64,000 nt of DNA. Source: Malacoraja senta. Taxonomy: Eukaryota. A model generated the notes under the pieces. It was not told where the DNA came from, did no database searches, and saw only the letters and a list, made by a program, of their open reading frames with translations. Of the stretch, positions 32,579-55,861 are shown in pieces. Position numbers and translations under genes: made by a program. The stretch spans positions 18,538,001 to 18,602,000 of the forward strand of contig CM075987.1 in assembly GCA_038087875.1 (NCBI GenBank), read 5' to 3'. How positions within the stretch are numbered: position 1 is the stretch's first letter; each line of letters begins with the position of its first letter.

Positions 32579-32711
32579 CTGTTTTGTTTCACATTGCACG
32601 TGATTTGCACAAGGAACCACAATCGCATCCGAGACAAAAATATTAGCTGAAGTAGATGCTGAGCAAGAAGTGGAATCACTGAATGTTAAAGGATGTTAAA
32701 TGTAAAACCCC

Positions 32712-34500: not shown

Positions 34501-35424
34501 ATTCTAGCAACTGCAGTTCCTTGTTATGAAATATCATTATAGCTAATGGACTTGTAAGCTTCAACTGTTCCTCAATGTGATTTAAAGAATGGACTTGTAA
34601 ACTCTCCTGGGTCTAGGCTGCAGATTACTCAAGTCCCACAAGATGTTGGTTGTCTTTTGCAGGTAAGAACTACATGGAAAACGTATTGGGGCTACTCATG
34701 CACATTAGTGTTGTAGTGATCTTCCAGGTCACTTTATCATCGTGGGGTTTGAAGAAGGGTCCTAACCTGAAACACCATTTGTCCATTTCCCTCCACAGAT
34801 ACTGCCTGACCCCCTGAGTTCCTCCAGCACTTTGTGTTTTGCTCAAGATTCCAACATCTGCAGTTCCTTGTGCCTGCCAAGTCATTTAGTTATGCAAACA
34901 ATTGCTCAAGGAAAACCTTAGTGAGGAAAGAGAGATGAAGATGGAAAAGATAGGCTGATGTAAAAGACTGAGAAAGGGTTGAAGATGAGGTCATAAACAG
35001 CAATGTGTGAGAAAATAGTGGATCTACTGATAATTTAACCATCCTGGCACCAACTCACTAAAGAAGACTGAAGCTCTCCATATTACAGAAATGTTTCAAA
35101 TAAATCTCGATACTTAGACAAGTGGCCCAGTAGCTGAAACCCTCAAAAGCAAGGGCACAGTCTTTTCATCTTACTGAATGAGGTGCAAGAATTGGCCTCA
35201 GCTTCTTTTAAAATTCACCTGTTGCTACCCAGGTCTTCCCACCAACCCCAGTATCTCTGCTGTAAAAGGAAGGAAAGGGAAAAAAAAATCTGTCACAGTT
35301 CTTTCTTTGGTCCCGAACAGCATTTTCTTTTGAGCTTATTGGAGCTGCAGTTATTCCAGAAAAATTGAGATTATTCAAACACATCCCTTGACTGTGGTGA
35401 GATGTTAGTTTAGTTTAGAAATAC

Positions 35425-35670
35425 AGTGCCTACACACACTAGGGACATTTTACACATACACAAAGTATACAAACCCAAGACAATTAACCTAGAAGCCTGC
35501 ACGTCTTTGCAGTGTGGAAGGAAACCAAAGATCTCGGAGAAAACCGACAAGGTCACGGGGAGAACGTACAAACCCCGTACAGACAGTACCCGTAGTCGGG
35601 ATCGAACCCGGGTGTCCGGCACTGCAAGCGCTGTAAGGTAGCTACTCTACCGCTGCGCCACCGTGTCGCC
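35425..35670 (-). mobile_element. Young HE1/V-SINE-like SINE (also at +10053)
   Basis: Intact A/B boxes on minus strand (GGTGGCGCAGCGGTAGAG...GGGTTCGATCCC); CpG-rich. Confidence 0.85.
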
Positions 35671-35771
35671 CTCAGATGGTTTGGGAGAATCAAATAATGA
35701 GTCACTTGCCGCAAGACACGTAGCCTCTTACTGGCTGCTGTAGCCCCAGTATTTATGAGTCCCACAGAACA

Positions 35772-36065
35772 GTAGCGCAGTGGTAGAACTGCTGCCTCAC
35801 AGCGCCAGAGACCCCGGATGGATCCTGACCTTGGCTGCTGTCTGAGTGGAGATTGCACACTCTCCCTGTGACCATATGGGTTTCCTCCGGATGCTCCGGT
35901 TTTCTCCCACATCCCAAAGATATGTAGGTTAATTGGCCTCTGTAAATTGCCTTTAGCATGTCGTGGCACAACTAGTGTGACCATGTGATCGACGGTCGGG
36001 TTGGTGAGATAAAGGGCCTGTTTCCATGCTGTATCTAAAATAAACTGGACAAAACCAAATCAAAC
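35772..36065 (+). mobile_element. HE1/V-SINE-like SINE, diverging from the previous copy (also at +10053)
   Basis: gtagcgcagtggtagaactgctgcctcacagcgccagagacccc. Confidence 0.8.
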
Positions 36066-36159
36066 TGTATCAAAGAGCGAAAGATTCATATTGCACTGGA
36101 AGCCATTTGGCCTGTTGTTATTCATAGCTCTCTGAATGAACTTTCCAATTGGTCCCTTA

Positions 36160-36495
36160 TAACCATATAACCATTACAGCATGGAAACAGGCCATCTCGG
36201 CCCTTCAAGTCCGTGCCGAACATTTTTTTAAATTTTTTTATTTTTTATTTTTTATTTTTTTAATTTAAAATAAATACTTCCCCCTAGTCCCATCTACCTG
36301 CACTCAGACCATGACCCTCCATTCCTTTCCTGTCCATATACCCATCCAATCTATTTTTAAAGGATAAAATCGAACCAGCCTCCACCACTTCCACTGGAAG
36401 CTCATTCCACACAGCTACCACTCTCTGAGTAAAGAAGTTCCCCCTAATGTTCCCCCTAAACTTCTGTCCCTTAATTCTCATGTCATGTCCCCTTA
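36160..36495 (-). mobile_element. CR1 LINE 3' end (also at +10053)
   Basis: RIKGQKFRGNIRGNFFTQRVVAVWNELP. Confidence 0.85.
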
Positions 36496-38682
36496 TCTCC
36501 TACCTCTTCACCACAGCCCAGGATTATTTTACTATTAAGAGTCACAGTTGTGTCAAGTCTACTGACTGTCGGAAAGGTCTCATTACTTATGAGGGATCTA
36601 GGAATACAGGTACATAGTTCCCTGAAAGTGGCATCACAAGTGGACAGGATGGTCAAGAAGTCTTTTGGCCTTCATCAGTCAGGGTATTGAGTATAAAAGT
36701 CGGGATGTTATGTTACAGTTGTACAATACATTGGTGAGGCCACACTTGGAGTACTGTGAATCAAAGATGCAGGTTAACGTATGAACCAAAACAAGACCTG
36801 GGATGTGAACTCCCAAGCAAGATCTGTGCCACAGCAGTGACACAAAATGACAATGAACAAGAGAGGGTCTGACCACCAATCTCTTGATATTGAACATCAA
36901 TATCTTGACCAACATTAACATCCTGAGCAGAGCTCTCTATCGACATGGAACATATGGAGAACCTCAAATAACATTAGCAGTGAGATACATATGTTCTTGA
37001 AGAGAAAAGTTGGTTTGTTTTTTCTGCGAATTGGGCACTGTTTTCCATATTTATTGTGAATAATAAAAATATCACTATACAACGATTGCCGACAAAATGC
37101 CCATTCCTTTATTTTACCTGTTATCTTTTTGGTGGTCATTGGGTGGCCAATGCAGAAGAATTGATGTATCTGGTGGAGGAGTTGATTTCCATGGAGACAA
37201 TGGAATCAAATTTCTGCTGGAAAATTGATCTTGCTTTTAATTTTGGTTTAAGATTGGCTGACACTATGGTGAGCCCATTAAAGCAGCACTCATCCTCCAC
37301 ATCGCAACCTGTGGCTGCATCGTAAGTGTTTACTACACTCCAACTCTTGTTCTAATAGACCCCTTTCCAATGTTAAGATCACATCTCTCATTCTTCCTTC
37401 TTACAGCAAATGAGGTGGTTTAGAATGGGGACAGAGAATGTTGTAGCCTCTCTAGACAGAGAGAAACAAACTCAACATTTTAGGACAATTACTGTTTAAG
37501 AACACTGAAAAGGAAACTGTTTCTTCAGATCAAACCCGCCAAGTCCTCTTATTATATTAAGGACCCTGATCAAAACAATGGGGCCAGGGGGAAGGCATTC
37601 CACTTGGGTTGAATGTGCCTTCCTTTGTATGTTTAACCCCATTGTCACCGGTGCTGGGTCCAACCAGCGCCTCATCACTGTTCACTAATTTCTAGTGTCG
37701 ATGAGAGCCACAGCCACATGGAGCCACAGCATTGAAACTGGCCCTTCAGCTCAATTCATCCCCGCTAACCAAGAGTCTATCTGAGCTAGTCCCATTTTAC
37801 AGCTGTCTGAAGAAGAATCCCCACCTGAAATGTTACCTGTCCATTTCCTCCACAGATGCTGTCTTAGATCCTCCAACATTTTGTGTTTTGCTCAAGATTC
37901 CAGCATCTGTAGTTCCTTGTGTCTTGGTTTCCCCATGTGCCCACATCCCTCTAAACCTTTTCTATCCATGTACCTGTCCAATGGTCTTTTTAATCTTGTA
38001 CCCATCTGCAAACCTTCCTCTGGCAGCTGCTTACAACACTTTAGTATGTTTTTTGCACTACTCCAGAATGCACACCAATCTTTGCGCCATTTTGCTGTTT
38101 TGTATTTGTCATTGTACTTATTATTGTACTTATCATTACCATGTACACTGTTTACTCTGTAAGCTTCATGCGAATAAGGAATTTCACCCTGGCGTATGTG
38201 ACAATAATAGTTGGAATCTGAATCCTCCGAATCCTTTGCCTTATTTTGGCTCAGCCCGCCAAATCATTGTGCACATCAAAATATGAGGCCTTAATCAAAT
38301 AATGAGCAAAAATAAGCAAAAGTGAAAGTTAGATTGAAACAGGGTGCAACAAGACCTGGTATTTTCTGACAATGCTGTGCTTGCTATCTCTCTCTCTAAT
38401 GCCCTCCCACTCTGTTAGTGGAGCACTCAATTATTTATTGATGGGTAGTGATACTGTTTCTGTCACCGAGCTGCCTGAAGCCAGAGAAAGGCGTCAAGGG
38501 AACTGCTCGAACTTCACCGTAATTAATCATTGTGCAAAAAATTTATATGAACTTTTATTGTGGTACCTGTCGCCAGCCGAAACACCAAGCGGTCGAAAGA
38601 CAGTGGACTGGTTCGCCTGCTTCTTTTTTTTCTTCTTTTGCTCCTGTTGGGAAATCCTCAATGCTCTGAGTTTTTTACAGCA

Positions 38683-38751
38683 ATGAAGTTTGCAGAACAT
38701 CTGTCGGCACATCTCACTCCAGAATGGAGGAAGCAGTACATCGCATACGAG
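38683..38751 (+). CDS. XPR1-like: XPR1-family (SPX-EXS phosphate exporter) first coding exon [23 protein letters not shown], copy A
   Basis: Canonical SPX N-terminus (MKF...PEW...YI.Y); 69 nt; donor GAG|GTGAGG. Confidence 0.93.
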
Positions 38752-39401
38752 GTGAGGACTTGCACAAGTTACTTCTCTGTATCTGAACTGTAGGGAACCA
38801 CTGCATTTAGTCCAGAGGGTTTAATTGTCATATGCACCTGAACAATGACATTCTTACTTGCTGCAGCTTAACAGGTCTGTAAACACAATACACACATTGA
38901 TAACATGAACAAAAATGTAATAAATTAACAACCACAATCCTAGTGCAGAAAAAACACACCAAAGTCCTTTGTGCAACCAAGGACAGTCCATAGAATTTCA
39001 TACATAGAGTGCTGGTGTAAATCAACGGGTCAGACAGCAAATCTGGAGGATAGCGATAGGTAACGTTTCAGGTCAGGACTCTTCTTCTGACTGAAGTGAC
39101 CTGAAACATTGCCTATACATGTCCTCCACAAATGCTGCCTGACCCACTGAGTTACTTCCGCACTTTGTGTGGTTTTATTCATTCCAGCATCTGCAGTTTC
39201 TTGTTTCTCCACAGAAGTTTATAGTTGCAGTTAGTGTTGCATTGTATTCAAGAGCCTGATGGTTGTTGGGAAGAAGCTGTTCTTGAACCTGGTGTGAGAG
39301 GTGAGGTTATGGTGGAAGGTGGCTATCGGTGAGAAACTGGCCCCAGTCAAGTTGGGGACCAGTAATGTGGAGAGTCAGTGTGTGGCTGGTGATCTACAAT
39401 C

Positions 39402-39680
39402 GGCACAGTGGCACAGATGGTAGAGCTGCTGCCTCACAGTGCCAGAGACCTGGGTTCGATCTTGAACTCAGGTGCTTTCTGTACAGAGTTTGCTTATTAT
39501 CTCTGTGGGTTTTTTTCGGTTTCCCCCCGAATCTCAAAGGAATGCAGGTTTGTTCAATTGGCCGCAGTAACTTACCCCTTAGTGGTAAGGAGTGGATATG
39601 AAAGTGGGCTAATGTGTGAACAGCTCAGCGTGGACTCGAGGGCTTTTTCCATGCATTATCTTTAAACTAAGCTAAACTTT
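39402..39680 (+). mobile_element. HE1/V-SINE-like SINE (also at +10053)
   Basis: ggcacagtggcacagatggtagagctgctgcctcacagtgccagagacctgggttcgatc. Confidence 0.8.
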
Positions 39681-41009
39681 AAACAAGAGTTATATGAAAT
39701 TATCAATGGCAACAGAATTGTTTTATTCTAAACCACATCCTTGTGTAAGTGTCTTTTAGTATCATCAGAAGAAACAAGAAACTACAGATGTTGGCATCTT
39801 GAGCTAAAAACAATGTCCTGGGGGTACTTGGGGAGTCAGGCAGCATCTGGGGAGAGAAATGGAGAGATGACATTTTGGATCAGAACCAGACTGGTTGAAT
39901 AGGGGGTTGATAGCTGGAAAAGGGAGGAGGGCCAAGACAAAGCCCCCAGTTCTATTTTCAAGAATCATTTATTGACGATGTTTACTAATCTGTGAAATGA
40001 AGCAATTCATCACTACAGTTGGTAATTTTTGCGAGCTAAGGTGAATAGAGTTAACAGTTAGAACTGGATTTGGATCTATCGTGAAGATGTGAGAATCAGA
40101 TGACAGCTCTCACTTTTGTTCCCATTCAGGAGTCCATGTCCAAGGCAATGCGTCCCCCCATTGATTTGATGCATGGTTAGATGTGCTGTTCTTCAGTGAC
40201 AGGGAAGTTAATCAAGTAGACTTTACAGATTAGGCTAAACAGAGCTGGTTAACATGGTGCCTTCAATCAGCAGCCTCTGGAAATAGCTAACCTGTTTCTC
40301 CAATGCAGTTTTAAGGTACTTCAATGTGCGCAAATTGGCTGCTCCGTTTGCCTGCAGATTGCCAGGTGTTGAGGGCAAGGAGGACAGAACCAATTAATGG
40401 ATTGATGTCAGGCATGTTGAAGGTGGGCTGTATTCACACCCATCTTCTTGAGACCGAGATGGACATGCCTCCCTTACAAAGAAATGAGGTCCACATTACT
40501 AAAAGAAACTACAGAAAAAATAACACAAAGCACAGACTCACCATAATGCTGGAGACACCAGGAACTGCAGATTACTTTGAGGAGATTCATCAGTGGAGTC
40601 TGAAGAAGTCGCCTGTCCATTCCCTCCTCAGATGCTGCCTGACCCATTGCGTTCCTTGAGCATTTTGTGTTTTGCTCCCCATAATGCTGGTGGGTTGCAT
40701 CTGCAGACAGCTCCTGTCATGCACACGGTGGCTTTAGCTGTACAGACCCCATCCCCAGCCATTTATGTTGTGAAACTTCCACCGTCAATTTGCTATTTCC
40801 ACTCATTTCACTTATGGGGGTTATGTGAACCATTGAGGTTCGAGTTGTGGCTTGAGTTCTTCAGGTAGTTCAAACAATAATTACAGATTCCTTGCCTCCA
40901 TCCACTACCCCTCAAAGCACAAGACTTGGCACCTCCCCATTTTAATCAGTCAGCTCTTGGAAGACTTGCAAATTGGCAGTTCAATAAACTTTGGAAATAC
41001 CTCCCTAAA

Positions 41010-41105
41010 CCTCCCTGCCTCTCAACCTCCTTGCCTCTCAACCTCCCTGCCTCTCACCCTCCCTGCCTCTCAACCTCCCTGCCTCTCAACCTCCCTGCCT
41101 CTCAA
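41010..41105 (+). repeat. 16-bp minisatellite (CCTCCCTGCCTCTCAA)x6 in XPR intron 1 (also 51063-51158)
   Basis: Six units with two single-base variants. Confidence 0.92.
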
Positions 41106-41369
41106 CTTCTTAAGACTTGGGATTTTGTCAACATCTTTGATTATATAGTATTGCTTGTTGGCAAATTTGCCAGTTTCCCCAATTCTTGTGAAACACCTTG
41201 GAATGTTTTAATCTTTCAAAAGTACCAGGTAAATCTACTTTTGTTTATCTGAAACGGCATCTTAATAAGCATTAAATTGTGAAGGACTTTTGCAAACTTG
41301 CTGGTGGCAGTTCATGAAGTCTCACAATGATCATGGTGGTTTTTAGTCGAGAATTGGTCTTGGTTTTGC

Positions 41370-41990
41370 TACTGGTTTACCAATGTCACTTGGATTGAGA
41401 TACTGTGAAAACGTTTCCTTGTGTGGTATCCAAACAAATCATACCATACATGGGTACAAACTCTTGAGTACAAAGAGAAAAAAAAGTGCAGACTATAGCA
41501 TGACAGAGAAAGCGCAGATAGCAAAAAGTACATAGCTATGACAAGGTAGATTGGGAGATCAATAATGTATTCGAAGCATACAAGTAGCCTGTTCAAGAAC
41601 CTGGCAGCAGCAGGGAAGAGGCTGTCCTTGAATCTGATAGCAATTGCTTTGAAGCTTTTGTGTCTTATGCCTGAAGGGAGAGGGGAACAGAGAGAACGAC
41701 CTGGGTGTGAGTGACCTTTGATTATGTTAACTACTTTCCCAAGGCAGCATGAAGTGCAGATGGAATCGATGGAAGGGTGGGGTGGAGGGAGAGGAGGCTG
41801 GTTTGTGTGTTCGACTGGGCCGTGTCCACAACTCAATGCAAATTTTGTGGCCCTGGCCAAAACAGTTGGCAACCCAAACTGCGATGCATTTGAGTAGGAT
41901 GCTTTCTACAGTGCATCTGTAGAAATTGGTAAGAATCTTTGGAGAAATTCCAAATTTCCTTAGTCTTCTGAAGAAACATGCCAAATTTCC
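41370..41990 (-). mobile_element. Rex1/L2-group LINE 3' fragment (also at 51423-52043)
   Basis: FFRRLRKFGISPKILTNFYRCTVESIL and HPGRSLCSPLPSGIRHKSFK..RFKDSLFPAAARFLN. Confidence 0.8.
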
Positions 41991-43154
41991 TTACAATCAA
42001 AGTTTTGCTCTAACAGAAACTGATGGCTATTGAGACAACTTAACACATGCACATATAACAAATCCACATTTCACCATAAAAAAGCCACAGCATTTTAATT
42101 TAATTATGTAAACGTATATTGAATTTTATCTCATTGCAGACAAGTCTGATGAAAGACTGGATTCCCCCAATCAGAGGGGAATGAAATGGTCATTGATTCT
42201 CCTCTCCTTTTAACTGTCTAATCAGCTTTTCTTGCACTGTACTGTTCTATCCTCCATCTATCTGCTACAATACACAACCAGATTTGAAAGAACTACAGAG
42301 CTTTGACCTGGTTCATGGGTCATGGTGTTGGTTGGCTCTGTCTATAACACACTGCCTCTGCTGCTAAATATAAGTGGAGTTCCATGTTGTGGGTTCAGGT
42401 TGGATTTTCATTCCTCAATGTTCTTGGAACTTCTGGCATTTTGTCCTGCACGCCTCATTGGATCAACATTGGCCAACTGCGCAGACAGTAGTGGCAGAGA
42501 TCACAGATAGTGGGTGAACACAGTGCTGCTGCTAATGCCCGTGAGTGCCATGCATTGAACTTCTAGCACAGCACCAAGTGTTGGAGGAACTCAGTGGATC
42601 AGGCACCATCATTGGAGGGAATGGACAGACAATGTTTCGGGTTGGGAACTTTATTCAGACTGTTTGTAAAGGGGGGGGGGGGTGGGGAGAGAGATACAGC
42701 TGAAAAGAGAGACGGGTATGGAACAAAGCCTGGCAAATGATAGGTGGATACAGGTGAGGCGGGTTAGGATGAGGGTTCTAGATTTGTCCTAAATCTATTC
42801 CATGAGGATGTTGATGTATTCACACAATGGAGGGGGGAACCACTGAATTGGCACGTGAGATGCCCTACATTACTGTCATGAAGAAATACAACTGAATGAA
42901 TCAAATGTCTTCATAATATTCAGCAATTACATTGAAGTTTCCTGCACCAAAGAAAACGCCACAGGGTCCACACATAATGAAAATCCCTCATTGGTGGCAT
43001 CATAAATTCAAAGAGAGAAGCTATTTGGTCTATTATGTTCAACTTGTTTAAAATGAAAGGTTTGTCAACATTATTTCACAACCTACTGCACTTTGGGTGT
43101 ATGAGAGGACATCATCACTAGATGTGAGCCACAAGGACCAACACAAGCAGACAC

Positions 43155-43484
43155 ATAGTATGGAAACAGGCCTTTCAGCCCAATGTGTCCATGACACCCT
43201 TGAACTAATCCCACACTAATCCCATTCTATTCTACGTAAATTCCCATCAACTCTCCCGCATTCTACCACTTACCCACACACCCACAGCAATTTTCAGAGG
43301 TCAATTAAACTACCAACCGTTGCGTCTTTAGGATCTGAGAGGAAACTAGAGTACCTGGAGTAAACCCATGCAGTCACAGGGAGAACATGCAAACTCCACA
43401 CAGACACTACCAGGGGTCAGGATCAAAGCCAGGTTTATGGAGCTGTGAGGCAGTGATTCTGCCAGCTGTGCCACCACACTGCCC
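43155..43484 (-). mobile_element. HE1/V-SINE-like SINE nested in a CR1-type tail (also at +10053)
   Basis: Reverse-complement SINE head at ~43420-43484. Confidence 0.7.
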
Positions 43485-43647
43485 AAAATTATGTATTGAT
43501 GGTCTTCCATCCAAGAGACATGGTAAGGTAGAAAACAGCAGTAGAGTTGGTTTAGTCTCAAGTGCCTCCTGCCTCATATCATGTGGGGTGGAACGACACC
43601 AGGTGCATGCTTACTTATTCTTTCTATTTTTTTTATTTATTGAACAG

Positions 43648-43699
43648 TCTTTGAAGAAGATGCTGTACTTGGCCCAGGAAGAAGCCCCAAACACAGAAG
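43648..43699 (+). CDS. XPR1-like: XPR1-family second coding exon SLKKMLYLAQEEAPNTE, copy A
   Basis: T-rich acceptor ...TTGAACAG|TCT, donor AAG|GTAATA; 52 nt; aligns to XPR1 AFKDMLYSAQDQAPSVE. Confidence 0.88.
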
Positions 43700-43705
43700 G
43701 TAATA

Positions 43706-44131
43706 GGGTATTAGCTACAAGGAGGGGTTGGACAAACTTGGATTGTTTTCTCCAGAACACTGGAGATTGAGGGGAGACCCGAGAGAAGTCTATAAAATTA
43801 TGAGAGGCGTAGATAGGGTTGACAGTCAGAACCTTTATCCCAGGGTCGAAATGTCAAAGACTAGAGGACATAGCTTTAAATTAAGAGGGGCAAAGTTTAA
43901 AGGAGATGTGCATGGCAAGTTCCTACACAGACCCAGATGGGTGCCTGGAACACGCTGCCAGGAGGTGTGGTGGATGCAGTTAAGTTAGGGGTATTTAAGA
44001 GGCGTTTAGATAGGCCCATTGGTGGGATGTGGACCCCATGCAGCAAATGGGACAAGTTTATTTTGGCACAATGCTCGGCCCAGACAATGTGGGCCAAAGC
44101 GCCCATACCTATGCTGTACTTTTCTATGTTC
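43706..44131 (+). mobile_element. CR1 LINE 3' end abutting the XPR exon 2 donor (also 53759-54184)
   Basis: DKLGLFSPEHWRLRGDPREVYKIMRGVDRVD..TRGHSFKLRG. Confidence 0.85.
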
Positions 44132-44216
44132 TGAGTGATGTTACTATGAGATGGAACAGCAGCATCCTCCAGAACAGATGTTGCTTCCACTATCTTGAAT
44201 AGAATATCCTGACTTG

Positions 44217-44416
44217 NNNNNNNNNNNNNNNNNNNNNNNNNNNNNNNNNNNNNNNNNNNNNNNNNNNNNNNNNNNNNNNNNNNNNNNNNNNNNNNNNNNN
44301 NNNNNNNNNNNNNNNNNNNNNNNNNNNNNNNNNNNNNNNNNNNNNNNNNNNNNNNNNNNNNNNNNNNNNNNNNNNNNNNNNNNNNNNNNNNNNNNNNNNN
44401 NNNNNNNNNNNNNNNN
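44217..44416. other. 200-N scaffold gap
   Basis: Run of N. Confidence 1.
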
Positions 44417-47400
44417 CGAGACCCTTCTTCAGACTCTCGACCCGAAAAGTCACCCATTCCTTCTCTCCAGAGAAGCTGCCTGTCCTGCTGAGTTACTCCA
44501 GCATTTTGTGCCTACCTTCGATTTAAACCAGCATCTGCAGTTCTTCCCTACACATTCTAGCAACTGCAGTTCCTTGTTATGAAATATCATTATAGCTAAT
44601 GGACTTGTAAGCTTCAACTGTTCCTCAATGTGATTTAAAGAATGGACTTGTAAACTCTCCTGGGTCTAGGCTGCAGATTACTCAAGTCCCACAAGATGTT
44701 GGTTGTCTTTTGCAGGTAAGAACTACATGGAAAACGTATTGGGGCTACTCATGCACATTAGTGTTGTAGTGATCTTCCAGGTCACTTTATCATCGTGGGG
44801 TTTGAAGAAGGGTCCTAACCTGAAACACCATTTGTCCATTTCCCTCCACAGATACTGCCTGACCCCCTGAGTTCCTCCAGCACTTTGTGTTTTGCTCAAG
44901 ATTCCAACATCTGCAGTTCCTTGTGCCTGCCAAGTCATTTAGTTATGCAAACAATTGCTCAAGGAAAACCTTAGTGAGGAAAGAGAGATGAAGATGGAAA
45001 AGATAGGCTGATGTAAAAGACTGAGAAAGGGTTGAAGATGAGGTCATAAACAGCAATGTGTGAGAAAATAGTGGATCTACTGATAATTTAACCATCCTGG
45101 CACCAACTCACTAAAGAAGACTGAAGCTCTCCATATTACAGAAATGTTTCAAATAAATCTCGATACTTAGACAAGTGGCCCAGTAGCTGAAACCCTCAAA
45201 AGCAAGGGCACAGTCTTTTCATCTTACTGAATGAGGTGCAAGAATTGGCCTCAGCTTCTTTTAAAATTCACCTGTTGCTACCCAGGTCTTCCCACCAACC
45301 CCAGTATCTCTGCTGTAAAAGGAAGGAAAGGGAAAAAAAAATCTGTCACAGTTCTTTCTTTGGTCCCGAACAGCATTTTCTTTTGAGCTTATTGGAGCTG
45401 CAGTTATTCCAGAAAAATTGAGATTATTCAAACACATCCCTTGACTGTGGTGAGATGTTAGTTTAGTTTAGAAATACAGTGCCTACACACACTAGGGACA
45501 TTTTACACATACACAAAGTATACAAACCCAAGACAATTAACCTAGAAGCCTGCACGTCTTTGCAGTGTGGAAGGAAACCAAAGATCTCGGAGAAAACCGA
45601 CAAGGTCACGGGGAGAACGTACAAACCCCGTACAGACAGTACCCGTAGTCGGGATCGAACCCGGGTGTCCGGCACTGCAAGCGCTGTAAGGTAGCTACTC
45701 TACCGCTGCGCCACCGTGTCGCCCTCAGATGGTTTGGGAGAATCAAATAATGAGTCACTTGCCGCAAGACACGTAGCCTCTTACTGGCTGCTGTAGCCCC
45801 AGTATTTATGAGTCCCACAGAACAGTAGCGCAGTGGTAGAACTGCTGCCTCACAGCGCCAGAGACCCCGGATGGATCCTGACCTTGGCTGCTGTCTGAGT
45901 GGAGATTGCACACTCTCCCTGTGACCATATGGGTTTCCTCCGGATGCTCCGGTTTTCTCCCACATCCCAAAGATATGTAGGTTAATTGGCCTCTGTAAAT
46001 TGCCTTTAGCATGTCGTGGCACAACTAGTGTGACCATGTGATCGACGGTCGGGTTGGTGAGATAAAGGGCCTGTTTCCATGCTGTATCTAAAATAAACTG
46101 GACAAAACCAAATCAAACTGTATCAAAGAGCGAAAGATTCATATTGCACTGGAAGCCATTTGGCCTGTTGTTATTCATAGCTCTCTGAATGAACTTTCCA
46201 ATTGGTCCCTTATAACCATATAACCATTACAGCATGGAAACAGGCCATCTCGGCCCTTCAAGTCCGTGCCGAACATTTTTTTAAATTTTTTTATTTTTTA
46301 TTTTTTATTTTTTTAATTTAAAATAAATACTTCCCCCTAGTCCCATCTACCTGCACTCAGACCATGACCCTCCATTCCTTTCCTGTCCATATACCCATCC
46401 AATCTATTTTTAAAGGATAAAATCGAACCAGCCTCCACCACTTCCACTGGAAGCTCATTCCACACAGCTACCACTCTCTGAGTAAAGAAGTTCCCCCTAA
46501 TGTTCCCCCTAAACTTCTGTCCCTTAATTCTCATGTCATGTCCCCTTATCTCCTACCTCTTCACCACAGCCCAGGATTATTTTACTATTAAGAGTCACAG
46601 TTGTGTCAAGTCTACTGACTGTCGGAAAGGTCTCATTACTTATGAGGGATCTAGGAATACAGGTACATAGTTCCCTGAAAGTGGCATCACAAGTGGACAG
46701 GATGGTCAAGAAGTCTTTTGGCCTTCATCAGTCAGGGTATTGAGTATAAAAGTCGGGATGTTATGTTACAGTTGTACAATACATTGGTGAGGCCACACTT
46801 GGAGTACTGTGAATCAAAGATGCAGGTTAACGTATGAACCAAAACAAGACCTGGGATGTGAACTCCCAAGCAAGATCTGTGCCACAGCAGTGACACAAAA
46901 TGACAATGAACAAGAGAGGGTCTGACCACCAATCTCTTGATATTGAACATCAATATCTTGACCAACATTAACATCCTGAGCAGAGCTCTCTATCGACATG
47001 GAACATATGGAGAACCTCAAATAACATTAGCAGTGAGATACATATGTTCTTGAAGAGAAAAGTTGGTTTGTTTTTTCTGCGAATTGGGCACTGTTTTCCA
47101 TATTTATTGTGAATAATAAAAATATCACTATACAACGATTGCCGACAAAATGCCCATTCCTTTATTTTACCTGTTATCTTTTTGGTGGTCATTGGGTGGC
47201 CAATGCAGAAGAATTGATGTATCTGGTGGAGGAGTTGATTTCCATGGAGACAATGGAATCAAATTTCTGCTGGAAAATTGATCTTGCTTTTAATTTTGGT
47301 TTAAGATTGGCTGACACTATGGTGAGCCCATTAAAGCAGCACTCATCCTCCACATCGCAACCTGTGGCTGCATCGTAAGTGTTTACTACACTCCAACTCT

Positions 47401-48735
47401 TGTTCTAATAGACCCCTTTCCAATGTTAAGATCACATCTCTCATTCTTCCTTCTTACAGCAAATGAGGTGGTTTAGAATGGGGACAGAGAATGTTGTAGC
47501 CTCTCTAGACAGAGAGAAACAAACTCAACATTTTAGGACAATTACTGTTTAAGAACACTGAAAAGGAAACTGTTTCTTCAGATCAAACCCGCCAAGTCCT
47601 CTTATTATATTAAGGACCCTGATCAAAACAATGGGGCCAGGGGGAAGGCATTCCACTTGGGTTGAATGTGCCTTCCTTTGTATGTTTAACCCCATTGTCA
47701 CCGGTGCTGGGTCCAACCAGCGCCTCATCACTGTTCACTAATTTCTAGTGTCGATGAGAGCCACAGCCACATGGAGCCACAGCATTGAAACTGGCCCTTC
47801 AGCTCAATTCATCCCCGCTAACCAAGAGTCTATCTGAGCTAGTCCCATTTTACAGCTGTCTGAAGAAGAATCCCCACCTGAAATGTTACCTGTCCATTTC
47901 CTCCACAGATGCTGTCTTAGATCCTCCAACATTTTGTGTTTTGCTCAAGATTCCAGCATCTGTAGTTCCTTGTGTCTTGGTTTCCCCATGTGCCCACATC
48001 CCTCTAAACCTTTTCTATCCATGTACCTGTCCAATGGTCTTTTTAATCTTGTACCCATCTGCAAACCTTCCTCTGGCAGCTGCTTACAACACTTTAGTAT
48101 GTTTTTTGCACTACTCCAGAATGCACACCAATCTTTGCGCCATTTTGCTGTTTTGTATTTGTCATTGTACTTATTATTGTACTTATCATTACCATGTACA
48201 CTGTTTACTCTGTAAGCTTCATGCGAATAAGGAATTTCACCCTGGCGTATGTGACAATAATAGTTGGAATCTGAATCCTCCGAATCCTTTGCCTTATTTT
48301 GGCTCAGCCCGCCAAATCATTGTGCACATCAAAATATGAGGCCTTAATCAAATAATGAGCAAAAATAAGCAAAAGTGAAAGTTAGATTGAAACAGGGTGC
48401 AACAAGACCTGGTATTTTCTGACAATGCTGTGCTTGCTATCTCTCTCTCTAATGCCCTCCCACTCTGTTAGTGGAGCACTCAATTATTTATTGATGGGTA
48501 GTGATACTGTTTCTGTCACCGAGCTGCCTGAAGCCAGAGAAAGGCGTCAAGGGAACTGCTCGAACTTCACCGTAATTAATCATTGTGCAAAAAATTTATA
48601 TGAACTTTTATTGTGGTACCTGTCGCCAGCCGAAACACCAAGCGGTCGAAAGACAGTGGACTGGTTCGCCTGCTTCTTTTTTTTCTTCTTTTGCTCCTGT
48701 TGGGAAATCCTCAATGCTCTGAGTTTTTTACAGCA

Positions 48736-48804
48736 ATGAAGTTTGCAGAACATCTGTCGGCACATCTCACTCCAGAATGGAGGAAGCAGTACATCGCATA
48801 CGAG
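48736..48804 (+). CDS. XPR1-like: XPR1-family first coding exon, copy B (duplicated block)
   Basis: Identical to 38683-38751 at offset +10053. Confidence 0.9.
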
Positions 48805-51800
48805 GTGAGGACTTGCACAAGTTACTTCTCTGTATCTGAACTGTAGGGAACCACTGCATTTAGTCCAGAGGGTTTAATTGTCATATGCACCTGAACAATG
48901 ACATTCTTACTTGCTGCAGCTTAACAGGTCTGTAAACACAATACACACATTGATAACATGAACAAAAATGTAATAAATTAACAACCACAATCCTAGTGCA
49001 GAAAAAACACACCAAAGTCCTTTGTGCAACCAAGGACAGTCCATAGAATTTCATACATAGAGTGCTGGTGTAAATCAACGGGTCAGACAGCAAATCTGGA
49101 GGATAGCGATAGGTAACGTTTCAGGTCAGGACTCTTCTTCTGACTGAAGTGACCTGAAACATTGCCTATACATGTCCTCCACAAATGCTGCCTGACCCAC
49201 TGAGTTACTTCCGCACTTTGTGTGGTTTTATTCATTCCAGCATCTGCAGTTTCTTGTTTCTCCACAGAAGTTTATAGTTGCAGTTAGTGTTGCATTGTAT
49301 TCAAGAGCCTGATGGTTGTTGGGAAGAAGCTGTTCTTGAACCTGGTGTGAGAGGTGAGGTTATGGTGGAAGGTGGCTATCGGTGAGAAACTGGCCCCAGT
49401 CAAGTTGGGGACCAGTAATGTGGAGAGTCAGTGTGTGGCTGGTGATCTACAATCGGCACAGTGGCACAGATGGTAGAGCTGCTGCCTCACAGTGCCAGAG
49501 ACCTGGGTTCGATCTTGAACTCAGGTGCTTTCTGTACAGAGTTTGCTTATTATCTCTGTGGGTTTTTTTCGGTTTCCCCCCGAATCTCAAAGGAATGCAG
49601 GTTTGTTCAATTGGCCGCAGTAACTTACCCCTTAGTGGTAAGGAGTGGATATGAAAGTGGGCTAATGTGTGAACAGCTCAGCGTGGACTCGAGGGCTTTT
49701 TCCATGCATTATCTTTAAACTAAGCTAAACTTTAAACAAGAGTTATATGAAATTATCAATGGCAACAGAATTGTTTTATTCTAAACCACATCCTTGTGTA
49801 AGTGTCTTTTAGTATCATCAGAAGAAACAAGAAACTACAGATGTTGGCATCTTGAGCTAAAAACAATGTCCTGGGGGTACTTGGGGAGTCAGGCAGCATC
49901 TGGGGAGAGAAATGGAGAGATGACATTTTGGATCAGAACCAGACTGGTTGAATAGGGGGTTGATAGCTGGAAAAGGGAGGAGGGCCAAGACAAAGCCCCC
50001 AGTTCTATTTTCAAGAATCATTTATTGACGATGTTTACTAATCTGTGAAATGAAGCAATTCATCACTACAGTTGGTAATTTTTGCGAGCTAAGGTGAATA
50101 GAGTTAACAGTTAGAACTGGATTTGGATCTATCGTGAAGATGTGAGAATCAGATGACAGCTCTCACTTTTGTTCCCATTCAGGAGTCCATGTCCAAGGCA
50201 ATGCGTCCCCCCATTGATTTGATGCATGGTTAGATGTGCTGTTCTTCAGTGACAGGGAAGTTAATCAAGTAGACTTTACAGATTAGGCTAAACAGAGCTG
50301 GTTAACATGGTGCCTTCAATCAGCAGCCTCTGGAAATAGCTAACCTGTTTCTCCAATGCAGTTTTAAGGTACTTCAATGTGCGCAAATTGGCTGCTCCGT
50401 TTGCCTGCAGATTGCCAGGTGTTGAGGGCAAGGAGGACAGAACCAATTAATGGATTGATGTCAGGCATGTTGAAGGTGGGCTGTATTCACACCCATCTTC
50501 TTGAGACCGAGATGGACATGCCTCCCTTACAAAGAAATGAGGTCCACATTACTAAAAGAAACTACAGAAAAAATAACACAAAGCACAGACTCACCATAAT
50601 GCTGGAGACACCAGGAACTGCAGATTACTTTGAGGAGATTCATCAGTGGAGTCTGAAGAAGTCGCCTGTCCATTCCCTCCTCAGATGCTGCCTGACCCAT
50701 TGCGTTCCTTGAGCATTTTGTGTTTTGCTCCCCATAATGCTGGTGGGTTGCATCTGCAGACAGCTCCTGTCATGCACACGGTGGCTTTAGCTGTACAGAC
50801 CCCATCCCCAGCCATTTATGTTGTGAAACTTCCACCGTCAATTTGCTATTTCCACTCATTTCACTTATGGGGGTTATGTGAACCATTGAGGTTCGAGTTG
50901 TGGCTTGAGTTCTTCAGGTAGTTCAAACAATAATTACAGATTCCTTGCCTCCATCCACTACCCCTCAAAGCACAAGACTTGGCACCTCCCCATTTTAATC
51001 AGTCAGCTCTTGGAAGACTTGCAAATTGGCAGTTCAATAAACTTTGGAAATACCTCCCTAAACCTCCCTGCCTCTCAACCTCCTTGCCTCTCAACCTCCC
51101 TGCCTCTCACCCTCCCTGCCTCTCAACCTCCCTGCCTCTCAACCTCCCTGCCTCTCAACTTCTTAAGACTTGGGATTTTGTCAACATCTTTGATTATATA
51201 GTATTGCTTGTTGGCAAATTTGCCAGTTTCCCCAATTCTTGTGAAACACCTTGGAATGTTTTAATCTTTCAAAAGTACCAGGTAAATCTACTTTTGTTTA
51301 TCTGAAACGGCATCTTAATAAGCATTAAATTGTGAAGGACTTTTGCAAACTTGCTGGTGGCAGTTCATGAAGTCTCACAATGATCATGGTGGTTTTTAGT
51401 CGAGAATTGGTCTTGGTTTTGCTACTGGTTTACCAATGTCACTTGGATTGAGATACTGTGAAAACGTTTCCTTGTGTGGTATCCAAACAAATCATACCAT
51501 ACATGGGTACAAACTCTTGAGTACAAAGAGAAAAAAAAGTGCAGACTATAGCATGACAGAGAAAGCGCAGATAGCAAAAAGTACATAGCTATGACAAGGT
51601 AGATTGGGAGATCAATAATGTATTCGAAGCATACAAGTAGCCTGTTCAAGAACCTGGCAGCAGCAGGGAAGAGGCTGTCCTTGAATCTGATAGCAATTGC
51701 TTTGAAGCTTTTGTGTCTTATGCCTGAAGGGAGAGGGGAACAGAGAGAACGACCTGGGTGTGAGTGACCTTTGATTATGTTAACTACTTTCCCAAGGCAG

Positions 51801-53700
51801 CATGAAGTGCAGATGGAATCGATGGAAGGGTGGGGTGGAGGGAGAGGAGGCTGGTTTGTGTGTTCGACTGGGCCGTGTCCACAACTCAATGCAAATTTTG
51901 TGGCCCTGGCCAAAACAGTTGGCAACCCAAACTGCGATGCATTTGAGTAGGATGCTTTCTACAGTGCATCTGTAGAAATTGGTAAGAATCTTTGGAGAAA
52001 TTCCAAATTTCCTTAGTCTTCTGAAGAAACATGCCAAATTTCCTTACAATCAAAGTTTTGCTCTAACAGAAACTGATGGCTATTGAGACAACTTAACACA
52101 TGCACATATAACAAATCCACATTTCACCATAAAAAAGCCACAGCATTTTAATTTAATTATGTAAACGTATATTGAATTTTATCTCATTGCAGACAAGTCT
52201 GATGAAAGACTGGATTCCCCCAATCAGAGGGGAATGAAATGGTCATTGATTCTCCTCTCCTTTTAACTGTCTAATCAGCTTTTCTTGCACTGTACTGTTC
52301 TATCCTCCATCTATCTGCTACAATACACAACCAGATTTGAAAGAACTACAGAGCTTTGACCTGGTTCATGGGTCATGGTGTTGGTTGGCTCTGTCTATAA
52401 CACACTGCCTCTGCTGCTAAATATAAGTGGAGTTCCATGTTGTGGGTTCAGGTTGGATTTTCATTCCTCAATGTTCTTGGAACTTCTGGCATTTTGTCCT
52501 GCACGCCTCATTGGATCAACATTGGCCAACTGCGCAGACAGTAGTGGCAGAGATCACAGATAGTGGGTGAACACAGTGCTGCTGCTAATGCCCGTGAGTG
52601 CCATGCATTGAACTTCTAGCACAGCACCAAGTGTTGGAGGAACTCAGTGGATCAGGCACCATCATTGGAGGGAATGGACAGACAATGTTTCGGGTTGGGA
52701 ACTTTATTCAGACTGTTTGTAAAGGGGGGGGGGGGTGGGGAGAGAGATACAGCTGAAAAGAGAGACGGGTATGGAACAAAGCCTGGCAAATGATAGGTGG
52801 ATACAGGTGAGGCGGGTTAGGATGAGGGTTCTAGATTTGTCCTAAATCTATTCCATGAGGATGTTGATGTATTCACACAATGGAGGGGGGAACCACTGAA
52901 TTGGCACGTGAGATGCCCTACATTACTGTCATGAAGAAATACAACTGAATGAATCAAATGTCTTCATAATATTCAGCAATTACATTGAAGTTTCCTGCAC
53001 CAAAGAAAACGCCACAGGGTCCACACATAATGAAAATCCCTCATTGGTGGCATCATAAATTCAAAGAGAGAAGCTATTTGGTCTATTATGTTCAACTTGT
53101 TTAAAATGAAAGGTTTGTCAACATTATTTCACAACCTACTGCACTTTGGGTGTATGAGAGGACATCATCACTAGATGTGAGCCACAAGGACCAACACAAG
53201 CAGACACATAGTATGGAAACAGGCCTTTCAGCCCAATGTGTCCATGACACCCTTGAACTAATCCCACACTAATCCCATTCTATTCTACGTAAATTCCCAT
53301 CAACTCTCCCGCATTCTACCACTTACCCACACACCCACAGCAATTTTCAGAGGTCAATTAAACTACCAACCGTTGCGTCTTTAGGATCTGAGAGGAAACT
53401 AGAGTACCTGGAGTAAACCCATGCAGTCACAGGGAGAACATGCAAACTCCACACAGACACTACCAGGGGTCAGGATCAAAGCCAGGTTTATGGAGCTGTG
53501 AGGCAGTGATTCTGCCAGCTGTGCCACCACACTGCCCAAAATTATGTATTGATGGTCTTCCATCCAAGAGACATGGTAAGGTAGAAAACAGCAGTAGAGT
53601 TGGTTTAGTCTCAAGTGCCTCCTGCCTCATATCATGTGGGGTGGAACGACACCAGGTGCATGCTTACTTATTCTTTCTATTTTTTTTATTTATTGAACAG

Positions 53701-53752
53701 TCTTTGAAGAAGATGCTGTACTTGGCCCAGGAAGAAGCCCCAAACACAGAAG
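53701..53752 (+). CDS. XPR1-like: XPR1-family second coding exon, copy B; I could not find exon 3 before the window end
   Basis: Identical to 43648-43699 at offset +10053. Confidence 0.87.
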
Positions 53753-55384
53753 GTAATAGGGTATTAGCTACAAGGAGGGGTTGGACAAACTTGGATTGTT
53801 TTCTCCAGAACACTGGAGATTGAGGGGAGACCCGAGAGAAGTCTATAAAATTATGAGAGGCGTAGATAGGGTTGACAGTCAGAACCTTTATCCCAGGGTC
53901 GAAATGTCAAAGACTAGAGGACATAGCTTTAAATTAAGAGGGGCAAAGTTTAAAGGAGATGTGCATGGCAAGTTCCTACACAGACCCAGATGGGTGCCTG
54001 GAACACGCTGCCAGGAGGTGTGGTGGATGCAGTTAAGTTAGGGGTATTTAAGAGGCGTTTAGATAGGCCCATTGGTGGGATGTGGACCCCATGCAGCAAA
54101 TGGGACAAGTTTATTTTGGCACAATGCTCGGCCCAGACAATGTGGGCCAAAGCGCCCATACCTATGCTGTACTTTTCTATGTTCTGAGTGATGTTACTAT
54201 GAGATGGAACAGCAGCATCCTCCAGAACAGATGTTGCTTCCACTATCTTGAATAGAATATCCTGACTTGCACTTGGAATTATGCCACCTTTAGTCAGTAT
54301 CCTGGACATTAATATTTAATGCTGAAATATGATTTAATTTATATATAATGAAAGAGGGCTTAGCTTCAACATTGTTCCAACAGTCAAACAGTGTTTAACA
54401 TTATTCCAAATATTTTTTTGAAGATTTACCGACTAGGATGTTATACTCTGTGCTCATGAATTCTCTCGCCAAAACATTCGATTTTCCTCCCATCTTCAAA
54501 TTAACTTTAACACCTGAGTTGGCTCAGTTAAAATTTGGTCTGATTATGTTCTTGTGAGGGGGAATCGCAATATTTCACAGTGTTAAAGGTGATATAATGT
54601 TAACTGTTCTTGTTCTTTACTTGACTTTCAACTGTGTTGGAAAAAAAACAGGCCATGATGAATAATTAACCTCCTGAATATGTTCCTATCAGGCAAGGGT
54701 GATGCTGAAGGATTTAATTAATAATCATGTCGTGCACAGCTTGAAATATGAAATGATTCTTTCTCGTCAATAATTTATCGAGGCAAAATGTTGTTCCACT
54801 GTTTGTGCTTACACTCCCAATGATATCTGTGCACAGCAGGAGAAAAAGTACTGAACAGTGTGCTGGTCACGAACACTCCCAAGAGGGAGTTTGTAGAAGT
54901 AACATTTTATTAAAATGAAACAATCATTCCTGTTCACCCTTTTTTCACGAGTTTGGAACCCCATTTAATAACAAACTGCTAGGAGGAAATGCAAAACAAT
55001 TGAATGGGGGATCTGCTTCATAGAGATCCGGTGGCAGGCTAAACAGCACAGGAGGTGAATTGACAAGAATGAAGAGGCAAGAGTATTAATTGTCATATGT
55101 ACTGGCATACAGTGAAATTCGTACTTGCTGCAGCTTAACAGGCCTGTTATAATGTAACAACATATAGTTAGTATATAATAGTTAAGTAACAATAAATTAA
55201 TAATCATCATACTAGGTAACCATAATAGTGCAAAAATAAAACCCAAAGCCCATGGTGCAACCAAAGGCACAAACCAGAGGAGATTTCGGCCCGAAACGTT
55301 GCCTATCTCCTTCGCTCCATAGATGCTGCTGCACCCGCTGAGTTTCTCCAGCATTTTTGTGTACCTTCATATTTGCTGAGGTTA

Positions 55385-55861
55385 GTGTAGGAAGGAACTG
55401 CAGATGCTGATTTAAACCAAAGATAGACATAAAAAGCTGGAGTAACTCATAGGGACAGGCAGCATCTCTGGAGAGAAGGAATGGGTGACGTTTCGGGTCA
55501 AGACACTTCTTCAGACTGGTTAGGGATAAGGGAATACAGACGATGATATAGAGATAAAGAACAATGAATGAAAGATATGCAAAAAAGTAATGATGATAAA
55601 GGAAACAGGTCATTGTTAGCTGTTTGTTGGGTGAAAACGAGAAGCTGGTGCGACCTGGGTAGGCGAGAGATAGAGAGAGAGCGAATGCCACAGTTACTTG
55701 AAGTTAGAAAAATCAATATTCATACCAAAATATCAGAAGCGAAATATGAGATGCTGTTCCTCCAATTTGCGTTTAGCCTCACTCTGACAATGGAGGAATC
55801 CTAGGACAGAAAGGTCTGTGTGGGAATGGGAAGGAGAATTAAAGTGTTTAGCAACCGGAAA
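55385..55861 (-). mobile_element. Second Penelope-like 3' fragment with hammerhead motif at 55487-55514
   Basis: Collinear with ~21165-21595; same KLEEQHLIF-encoding segment and same terminus. Confidence 0.85.

What the first reader, a model, noticed from the sequence alone, without database searches (positions are those of the whole stretch)
38683..53752. Probable second XPR gene: an XPR1 ohnolog beside UBAC1, apparently absent in human
Seen: the two exons give [40 protein letters not shown], which differs at about 10 of 40 positions from human XPR1 as I recall it ([40 protein letters not shown]). The inositol-pyrophosphate-binding residues K2, Y22 and K26 are kept and splice sites are intact. 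Known: human XPR1 lies at 1q25 near ACBD6, LHX4 and QSOX1, while UBAC1 lies at 9q34.3 near NACC2, LHX3 and QSOX2. These regions are paralogous, and human has only one XPR gene. Inference: this is the 9q34-paralogon copy ('XPR2') retained in cartilaginous fish, i.e. a little-characterised second InsP-regulated phosphate exporter in animals with heavy tesseral and dermal mineralisation.
Basis: partly seen in the sequence, partly recalled or inferred. Interest (0 to 1): 0.8.

Follow-up and report, generated by a model that had tools for sequence, protein, structure and literature searches.

The report
Skate's second XPR phosphate-exporter gene
The window holds the start of an intact gene for an ancient sister copy of the phosphate exporter XPR1, which cartilaginous fishes, several bony fishes and amphibians keep but no reptile, bird or mammal in the database shows; the apparent doubling of its first two exons is an assembly artefact.

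Summary
The two exons and the 40-aa peptide are real: exon 1 at 38683-38751 and exon 2 at 43648-43699, both with intact splice sites. Each is printed twice. Window 34364-44216 equals 44417-54269 (9,853 bp, 0 mismatches), and the two copies abut the 200-N gap, so this is an unmerged contig overlap.

The gene continues past the window for 15 coding exons and 684 aa, with no disruption. It is 96.5% identical to the Amblyraja "XPR1 homolog" and about 60% to canonical XPR1.

Rooted ML trees place it in a separate clade B (100/100) holding chimaera, sharks, rays, coelacanth, bichir, bowfin, some teleosts and amphibians. No amniote member was found. A cartilaginous-fish-specific duplication is rejected (p-AU 1e-73). 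The neighbours CAMSAP1, UBAC1 and a QSOX gene match the human 9q34.3 block.

Canonical XPR1 is undetectable in this assembly, though related skates have it. A relative's contigs are spliced at the predicted junctions.

It keeps 33 of 36 tested XPR1 residues. Clade B has altered the auto-inhibitory plug's E622-R472 salt bridge.

The mineralisation link is not.

The parts
38683..38751 (+). XPR-B coding exon 1, copy A (ATG at 38683; donor GT)
   Evidence: It encodes [23 protein letters not shown].
43648..43699 (+). XPR-B coding exon 2, copy A (acceptor AG, donor GT)
   Evidence: It encodes SLKKMLYLAQEEAPNTE plus the first base of the next codon.
34364..44216 (.). Copy A of the duplicated 9,853 bp: the end of the contig left of the gap
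   Evidence: It is 100% identical to 44417-54269 and ends exactly at the gap.
44217..44416 (.). 200-N assembly gap inside intron 2, most likely spurious (the flanking contigs overlap)
   Evidence: Not filled and not looked up.
44417..54269 (.). Copy B of the duplicated 9,853 bp: the start of the contig right of the gap
   Evidence: There are 0 mismatches to copy A, and it starts exactly at the gap.
48736..48804 (+). XPR-B coding exon 1, copy B (identical to copy A)
53701..53752 (+). XPR-B coding exon 2, copy B (identical to copy A)
53753..64000 (+). Start of intron 2, which runs off the window. Exons 3-15 lie at G000:C11:18609389-18631660, which is window coordinate + 18538000 (extended coordinates 71389-93660).
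   Evidence: full model with 15 coding exons and 684 aa. All junctions are AG/GT except the GC donor of exon 11.
27829..28059 (-). Open frame holding UBAC1 coding exon 1 ([26 protein letters not shown]...), head-to-head with XPR-B about 10.6 kb away
   Evidence: (Pfam UBL_UBAC1, E 0.0037, a partial hit below the gathering score)
6516..18466 (-). Further UBAC1 exons, inside the open frames 18194-18466, 16628-16870, 16105-16317, 11492-11866 and 6516-6731
   Evidence: UBA_7, E 1.9e-5; best PDB match 2dai, 'Ubiquitin associated domain containing 1', E 1e-7

Best explanation
The window contains the first two coding exons of a complete, intact gene for a second SPX-EXS (SLC53/XPR-family) protein, called XPR-B here. 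The gene has 15 coding exons, encodes 684 aa and spans about 45 kb. The exons are printed twice because two overlapping contig ends were joined by a 200-N placeholder instead of being merged.

XPR-B is the orthologue of the RefSeq 'XPR1 homolog' of Amblyraja and Leucoraja. It belongs to an ancient jawed-vertebrate paralog clade of XPR1. The gene sits in the CAMSAP1-UBAC1-[XPR-B]-...-QSOX block that corresponds to human 9q34.3. It is most likely a 2R ohnolog of XPR1 (human 1q25) that was lost in the amniote stem.

Shown: sequence, structure, phylogeny, synteny, and spliced contigs in a relative.

Inferred mechanism: like XPR1, it is an inositol-pyrophosphate-gated phosphate export channel or transporter. 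The SPX lysine clamp (K2, K158, K161, K162, K165 with R308, K364, K369) binds InsP8. The EXS pore (K482, R570, R603, R604, W573 gate, D398, D529, D533, Y483, W528) conducts phosphate.

Inferred difference: the auto-inhibitory C-terminal plug keeps F623 and its aromatic/cation partners. However, the E622-R472 salt bridge that latches the plug in human XPR1 is altered at one or both ends in every clade-B protein examined (D472/Q622 here). Plug release, and so basal activity or dependence on KIDINS220/InsP8, is predicted to differ from XPR1.
For: Artefact: 9,853 bp with 0 mismatches, bounded exactly by the gap edges. The 10,053 bp offset equals the copy length plus the 200 N.

Gene: the full ORF is 96.5% identical to P0163 and 95.9% to P0162. 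EXS Pfam hits cover six exons. One exon aligns to human SLC53A1 residues 444-500 at E 1e-25.

Phylogeny: clade B is supported at 100 SH-aLRT and 100/100, and clade A at 99/96. The window protein is sister to Amblyraja plus Leucoraja at 100/100. Holding all cartilaginous-fish A and B sequences together costs 271 lnL, p-AU 1e-73.

Both genes in relatives: Leucoraja, Rhinoraja, Mobula, Hypanus, Narcine, Hemitrygon and sharks all carry a canonical copy.

Synteny: CAMSAP1 at C11:18.45 Mb, UBAC1 in the window, and a QSOX-type exon at C11:18.92 Mb. In bowfin the orthologue is flanked by SURF2 and a BTB+BEN gene.

No amniote clade-B protein ranked above the canonical block.

Expression: in run X25, a relative at 97-98% identity, one contig joins exon 9 to exon 10 at the predicted junction, and others enter exon 8 at its acceptor and leave exon 12 at its donor.

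Residues: 33 of 36 tested residues are kept. None of the 15 clade-B proteins keeps both R472 and E622; all 11 clade-A and lamprey rows keep both. The residue roles come from 10.1101/2024.12.22.630011.
Against: No transport assay or structure exists for any clade-B protein, so function is inferred from conserved residues only.

Canonical XPR1 cannot be found in this assembly with protein, HMM or cDNA probes. For this individual genome the 'second gene' status is indirect.

Run X25 is only guessed to be RNA and comes from a related species. No RNA run of the window's own species was found.

The WGD (ohnolog) origin is not dated. Lamprey attaches only weakly to clade B (84/69; unresolved). No amphioxus or tunicate outgroup was available. 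Human map positions are from memory.

The salt-bridge changes might be compensated, for example by a His/Gln622-Asp472 hydrogen bond, leaving regulation unchanged.
Confidence: 0.85

Rival explanations
1. The 10-kb repeat is a true recent tandem duplication of exons 1-2, giving two alternative first exons or promoters, and not an assembly artefact.
For: The assembly prints it so. Tandem segmental duplications do occur.
Against: There are 0 mismatches in 9,853 bp. The identity begins at the first base after the N run and ends at the last base before it, as expected for overlapping contig ends and very unlikely for a biological duplication. Skate orthologue proteins are single-copy models.
Confidence: 0.04
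2. This is simply the species' XPR1 orthologue: the only XPR gene, fast-evolving and moved next to UBAC1.
For: It is the only XPR locus found in the 1.94-Gb assembly by EXS HMM, two canonical proteins, a paralog protein and a canonical cDNA.
Against: It is 96% identical to the clade-B proteins of Amblyraja and Leucoraja but only about 60% to the canonical protein of Leucoraja. Leucoraja and Rhinoraja have both genes. The tree and the AU test separate the clades. Only one QSOX gene is found too, which fits a missing 1q25-like region in an incomplete assembly.
Confidence: 0.02
3. Clade B arose by a small-scale (non-WGD) duplication before the jawed-vertebrate radiation, so it is a paralog but not an ohnolog.
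For: The tree dates the split only as pre-gnathostome-crown. The lamprey position is weak. No invertebrate-chordate outgroup was used.
Against: Several flanking gene families (CAMSAP, QSOX, and NACC in bowfin) have their own paralogs distributed over the same pair of human regions (9q34 and 1q, from memory). That is the signature of block duplication.
Confidence: 0.12
4. The gene is a decaying or unexpressed relic (pseudogene in progress).
For: Clade B evolves faster than clade A, e.g. skate vs coelacanth 69.6% against 79.9%. No full-length transcript contig with the exact skate clade-B protein is on record, against 20 for the canonical one.
Against: All 15 exons are open with proper splice sites. 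33 of 36 functional residues are kept. The clade's conservation follows the species tree across the jawed vertebrates sampled. A relative has spliced contigs.
Confidence: 0.03

Closest known systems
Human XPR1 / SLC53A1 (cryo-EM structures such as 8x5f, 9dvj, 9j4x)
   Same: It has the same SPX plus EXS architecture and nearly the same length. About 60% of residues are identical. The InsP8 clamp, positive pore ring, W573 gate, intracellular entrance residues and F623 of the plug are conserved.
   Different: It belongs to a separate paralog clade. R472 becomes D and E622 becomes Q, so both ends of the auto-inhibitory salt bridge change. Y443 becomes N in rays and skates. C440 of the C415-C440 disulfide is replaced. 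The C-terminal tail is only about 40% identical. It sits in a different chromosomal neighbourhood.
[quoted passage not shown]
   Same: These are orthologues, 96.5% and 95.9% identical over 683 aa, with the same exon structure including the small terminal exon. They lie on chromosomes of similar size: 31.2 and 28.2 Mb against 28.5 Mb here.
   Different: They come from other species. Their names do not distinguish them from the canonical gene, which carries the same RefSeq name in the same species.
Teleost xpr1a / xpr1b (zebrafish xpr1b is needed for microglia and osteoclast-lineage macrophages)
   Same: They belong to the same family and are also duplicates.
   Different: xpr1a and xpr1b both fall inside canonical clade A as teleost-specific duplicates. 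Clade B is a third, older lineage that some teleosts (eel, anchovy, knifefish, cyprinid, mormyrid) carry in addition.
Plant PHO1 and yeast Syg1/SpXpr1 (SPX-EXS phosphate exporters)
   Same: They share the SPX-EXS domain organisation and the presumed function. Syg1 is a weak PDB hit.
   Different: They are far more distant and are not orthologous to either vertebrate clade.

Membership tests
SLC53 / XPR1-type SPX-EXS phosphate exporters | C-terminal EXS domain (Pfam PF03124) | tested here: met
   Six exon-level hits to PF03124, all above the cut-off and together covering profile positions 2-316 of 330. The orthologue P0163 carries PF03105 and PF03124.
SLC53 / XPR1-type SPX-EXS phosphate exporters | N-terminal SPX domain with the inositol-pyrophosphate-binding residues (K2, Y22, K26, K158, K161, K162, K165) | tested here: met
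   All seven are identical in the window protein. The six-frame SPX HMM search itself gave only repeat noise because the exons are short.
SLC53 / XPR1-type SPX-EXS phosphate exporters | Phosphate pore: positive ring K482/R570/R603/R604, W573 gate, and D398/N401/Y483/W528/D529/D533 network | tested here: met
   All are identical. The residue list comes from 10.1101/2024.12.22.630011.
SLC53 / XPR1-type SPX-EXS phosphate exporters | Auto-inhibitory C-terminal plug: E622-R472 salt bridge plus F623 stacking on F391/F394/R466 | tested here: not met
   F623, F391, F394 and R466 are kept. R472 becomes D and E622 becomes Q. No clade-B protein keeps both R472 and E622. This feature is described for human XPR1, not for the whole family, so it marks a variant rather than exclusion.
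SLC53 / XPR1-type SPX-EXS phosphate exporters | InsP8-dependent phosphate efflux activity | not testable with these tools
   This needs an efflux assay in XPR1-knockout cells.
Canonical XPR1 orthologue group (clade A, includes human XPR1 and teleost xpr1a/b) | Groups with tetrapod XPR1 in a rooted tree | tested here: not met
   It falls in clade B (100/100), outside clade A (99/96).
Vertebrate XPR clade B ('XPR1 homolog' / 'SLC53A1-like' second gene) | Monophyly with the second XPR genes of chimaera, sharks, rays, coelacanth, bichir, bowfin and amphibians | tested here: met
   The AU test rejects the alternative.
Vertebrate XPR clade B ('XPR1 homolog' / 'SLC53A1-like' second gene) | Position in the 9q34.3-type block (CAMSAP1, UBAC1, NACC2, QSOX2 neighbours) | tested here: met
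   CAMSAP1, UBAC1 and a QSOX gene lie on the same contig within about 470 kb. Bowfin has SURF2 and a BTB+BEN gene as flanks. NACC2 and LHX3 were not located here (one search was uninformative). The PDB cannot tell QSOX2 from QSOX1.
2R ohnolog pair (XPR1 / XPR-B) | Duplication dated to the vertebrate stem, with both copies in paralogous blocks | tested here: inconclusive
   The split predates crown gnathostomes and the block is paralogon-like. But the lamprey placement is weak (84/69), there is no invertebrate-chordate outgroup, and the canonical locus is not in this assembly.

The most novel reading that the evidence does not exclude
Non-amniote jawed vertebrates have a second, functionally distinct phosphate exporter. 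Its auto-inhibitory plug latch (the E622-R472 salt bridge of XPR1) has been remodelled, so it is regulated differently: for example higher basal efflux, or less dependence on KIDINS220 or InsP8. Its loss in the amniote stem left XPR1 as the sole exporter. Separately, this skate species might truly lack canonical XPR1 and rely on XPR-B alone.
Probability: 0.25. Interest if true: 0.6.

Novelty: new member of a known kind. Interest (0 to 1): 0.42.

Why it matters
XPR1 is routinely described as the only known phosphate exporter of animal cells, for example in the abstract listed. All mechanistic work is on the single human protein.

A conserved second family member in fishes and amphibians gives a natural variant of the auto-inhibitory plug. 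It can be used to test the current gating model of plug release by KIDINS220 and InsP8.

It also bears on how xpr1 knockouts are read in fish and amphibian models, which may carry a third, overlooked gene. Some teleosts do. I did not check the usual laboratory species.

For genome annotation there are three lessons:
- Identical RefSeq names hide two different genes in the same species.
- This assembly contains an unmerged contig overlap that duplicates a promoter and two exons.
- The assembly lacks the canonical XPR1 region.

Tried and rejected
- Six-frame search with the SPX Pfam model returned only low-complexity repeat frames on small contigs. SPX exons are too short, so I used protein queries instead.
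- The BEN-domain search meant to find NACC2 downstream found only an unrelated multi-BEN gene on contig C3996. It says nothing about NACC2.
- The look-up of the coelacanth clade-B locus found no record.
- Two searches for RNA runs found no run recorded as RNA. Only X25, guessed to be RNA and from a relative, was usable.
- Two literature searches found no paper describing the paralog. The hits for 'xpr1l' and 'xpr1c' are Cre lines and mouse alleles.
- My first automatic splice-site picker chose a wrong GT donor in exon 11 and gave a 669-aa model. Inspection showed a GC-AG intron with the consensus GCAAGT donor, which restores the junction seen in the skate proteins.
- I did not fold the protein. 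With 60% identity to solved structures, a model would add little.
- The idea that rays and skates lack canonical XPR1, suggested by the top list, was rejected once the 90% cluster of P0273 was opened.


Full report
OBSERVATION. The two exons exist as described. Exon 1 runs 38683-38751, starting at the ATG and followed by GT. Exon 2 runs 43648-43699, preceded by AG and followed by GT. These differ at exactly 10 of 40 positions from mammalian (P0278), shark (P0246) and skate (P0319) canonical XPR1. K2, Y22 and K26 are kept.

ASSEMBLY ARTEFACT. The ORF list showed every ORF recurring at +10,053 bp. Window 34364-44216 is identical to 44417-54269 over 9,853 bp with no mismatch. The identical stretch ends at the last base before the N run and begins at the first base after it. 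The offset equals the copy length plus the 200-N placeholder. This is what two overlapping contig ends look like when a scaffolder joins them with a gap instead of merging them.

Exons 1 and 2 are therefore printed twice, the second time at 48736-48804 and 53701-53752. The gap lies in intron 2, 517 bp after exon 2 of copy A, so no reading frame crosses it. I did not try to read or fill the gap.

GENE MODEL. All EXS-domain hits in the 1.94-Gb assembly lie on the same contig and strand, 16-24 kb beyond the window's end. I fetched the downstream DNA and obtained guide proteins. With these I assembled 15 coding exons from C11:18586736 to 18631660. They give an uninterrupted 684-aa ORF. Every junction is AG/GT except the donor of exon 11. 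That donor is GCAAGT, a standard GC-AG intron, and it reproduces the junction of the skate proteins.

A read-through of exon 14 would give a 675-aa isoform with the C-terminus seen in the Hypanus model. The protein is 96.5% identical to the Amblyraja 'XPR1 homolog' (P0163) and 95.9% to the Leucoraja one (P0162). It is 89.6% and 85.6% identical to the ray proteins, 76.5% to chimaera, 69.3% to the coelacanth 'SLC53A1-like' protein, and only 60-61% to canonical XPR1 of shark, coelacanth, bird or teleost. The window therefore comes from a skate close to, but different from, those two species.

HOW MANY XPR GENES. Five whole-assembly searches found only this locus: the EXS HMM, a clade-B protein, a teleost canonical XPR1, the skate canonical XPR1, and a 4.4-kb canonical skate transcript including its 3'UTR. 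Exon 1 was reported twice because of the artefact.

Canonical XPR1 nevertheless exists in Leucoraja, Rhinoraja, Mobula, Hypanus, Narcine, Hemitrygon and many sharks, alongside the second gene. Only one QSOX gene is detectable here too; the other Erv1/ALR locus is GFER. The simplest reading is that the region carrying XPR1, and perhaps QSOX1, is missing or withheld from this assembly. I cannot exclude a real loss in this species.

PHYLOGENY. A 55-sequence ML tree rooted on protostomes and a 40-sequence careful tree without the long teleost branches agree. Clade A (99/96) holds mammal, bird, turtle, amphibian, coelacanth, chimaera, shark, ray, gar and bowfin XPR1, with teleost xpr1a and xpr1b as internal duplicates.

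Clade B (100/100, on a long stem of 0.5) holds the second genes of chimaera, sharks, rays and skates on one side. Coelacanth, amphibians (caecilian, tailed frog, axolotl), bichir and bowfin are on the other, plus fast-evolving teleost members in the larger tree. Each clade follows the species tree. The window protein is sister to Amblyraja plus Leucoraja (100/100).

Forcing all cartilaginous-fish sequences into one clade costs 271 log-likelihood units (p-AU 1e-73). Lamprey attaches weakly to clade B (84/69) or is unresolved. The duplication is therefore older than crown jawed vertebrates, but its position relative to cyclostomes is open.

Searching with an amphibian clade-B protein adds newt and further frogs. 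No reptile, bird or mammal ranks above the canonical block. Clade B evolves faster than clade A, for example skate vs coelacanth 69.6% against 79.9%.

SYNTENY. UBAC1 lies on the minus strand with its first exon near 28050, head-to-head with XPR-B. It is supported by Pfam UBL_UBAC1 and UBA hits and a best PDB match to the human UBAC1 UBA domain. CAMSAP1 lies 87 kb before the window's start, at E 3e-42 against 3e-27 for CAMSAP3. A QSOX-type exon lies 290 kb downstream. In bowfin the clade-B gene lies between SURF2 and a 619-aa BTB+BEN (NACC-type) gene.

From my knowledge of the human map, which I did not test here, CAMSAP1, UBAC1, NACC2, LHX3 and QSOX2 are neighbours at 9q34.3 and SURF2 is at 9q34.2. 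XPR1 lies at 1q25 with ACBD6, LHX4 and QSOX1. That fits a block (2R) duplication followed by loss in amniotes.

EXPRESSION. No run recorded as RNA holds the locus. When laid on exons 8-12, run X25 (a related species, guessed to be RNA) gives three relevant contigs. One joins position 2128 to 2932 of the laid stretch, which is the exon 9/exon 10 junction. A 1,078-nt contig enters exon 8 at its acceptor. A third runs off the donor of exon 12. All are 97-98% identical. These are spliced transcripts of the orthologue. Runs X1 and X2 match with no differences through the introns, so they are DNA of the same species, possibly the source.

MECHANISM. The skate protein keeps 33 of them. Kept residues include the whole InsP8 clamp, the positive ring, the W573 gate and the intracellular entrance. 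Phosphate export gated by inositol pyrophosphate is therefore the most likely function. This is inferred, not shown.

The three changes are informative. Y443 to N is specific to rays and skates. The other two are R472 to D (D, N or S across clade B) and E622 to Q (Q or H). In human XPR1, E622 of the auto-inhibitory C-terminal plug forms a salt bridge with R472, and the E622A/F623A mutant is hyperactive. No clade-B protein of 15 keeps both residues; all 11 clade-A and lamprey proteins do. F623 and its partners F391, F394 and R466 are kept. The helix predicted to bind KIDINS220 is moderately conserved. I therefore predict a plug that still docks but is latched differently. This is a hypothesis, at about one chance in three.

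KNOWN OR NEW. Orthologues in related skates and many other species are already in RefSeq under uninformative names: 'XPR1 homolog' and 'SLC53A1-like'. Sometimes the same name is used for both genes of one species. [quoted passage not shown] The gene is a new member of a known kind. The clade-wide change of the plug salt bridge is, as far as I can tell, a new observation.

The proposed link to mineralised tesserae and denticles has no support. The gene's distribution, which includes amphibians, bichir and bowfin, argues against a role special to cartilaginous fish.

Noticed in passing
whole assembly G000 (searches from the window): Canonical XPR1 (protein, HMM and 4.4-kb cDNA probes) and a second QSOX gene are both undetectable in the 1.94-Gb assembly, although related skates have canonical XPR1. 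A 1q25-like region may be missing or withheld.
   Followed up: partly
window 34364 (start of the duplicated block), inside 32383-34500: The contig overlap begins inside the stretch that another first-stage note (s1-195622) describes as fold-back Penelope-like element copies. A repeat there could explain why the assembler broke and failed to merge the contigs.
   Followed up: no
window 25001-25792 (+), inside UBAC1 intron 1: A 264-aa open frame with reverse-transcriptase-like motifs (…[13 protein letters not shown]…FADDTTLIG…). It is probably a LINE-type retrotransposon fragment.
   Followed up: no
L050 (G000:C11:18617900-18623700) positions 583-1358, 2135-2328 and 5045-5432; similar short ORFs recur throughout the window: The introns hold very high-copy repeats, with contig depth up to millions in four runs from three species. 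Loose-end consensus CCAGAGACCCGGGTTCGATCC resembles a tRNA-derived SINE head.
   Followed up: no
G000:C11:18622112/18622113 (exon 11 donor; extended window coordinate 84112): A GC-AG intron (donor GCAAGT) in XPR-B. The splice position matches the skate protein models.
   Followed up: partly
G000:C11:18627389-18627614 and 18631615-18631660: Two possible C-termini. Exon 14 spliced to a 46-nt terminal exon gives 684 aa, as in Amblyraja and Leucoraja. Read-through to a stop 16 nt past the donor gives 675 aa, with a tail like the Hypanus model.
   Followed up: partly
proteins P0033, P0080, P0141, P0120, P0342 (teleosts): Some teleosts (cutthroat eel, anchovy, knifefish, a leuciscid, mormyrids) carry a third, very fast-evolving XPR gene of clade B besides xpr1a and xpr1b. 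Several of these models are truncated or odd in composition.
   Followed up: partly
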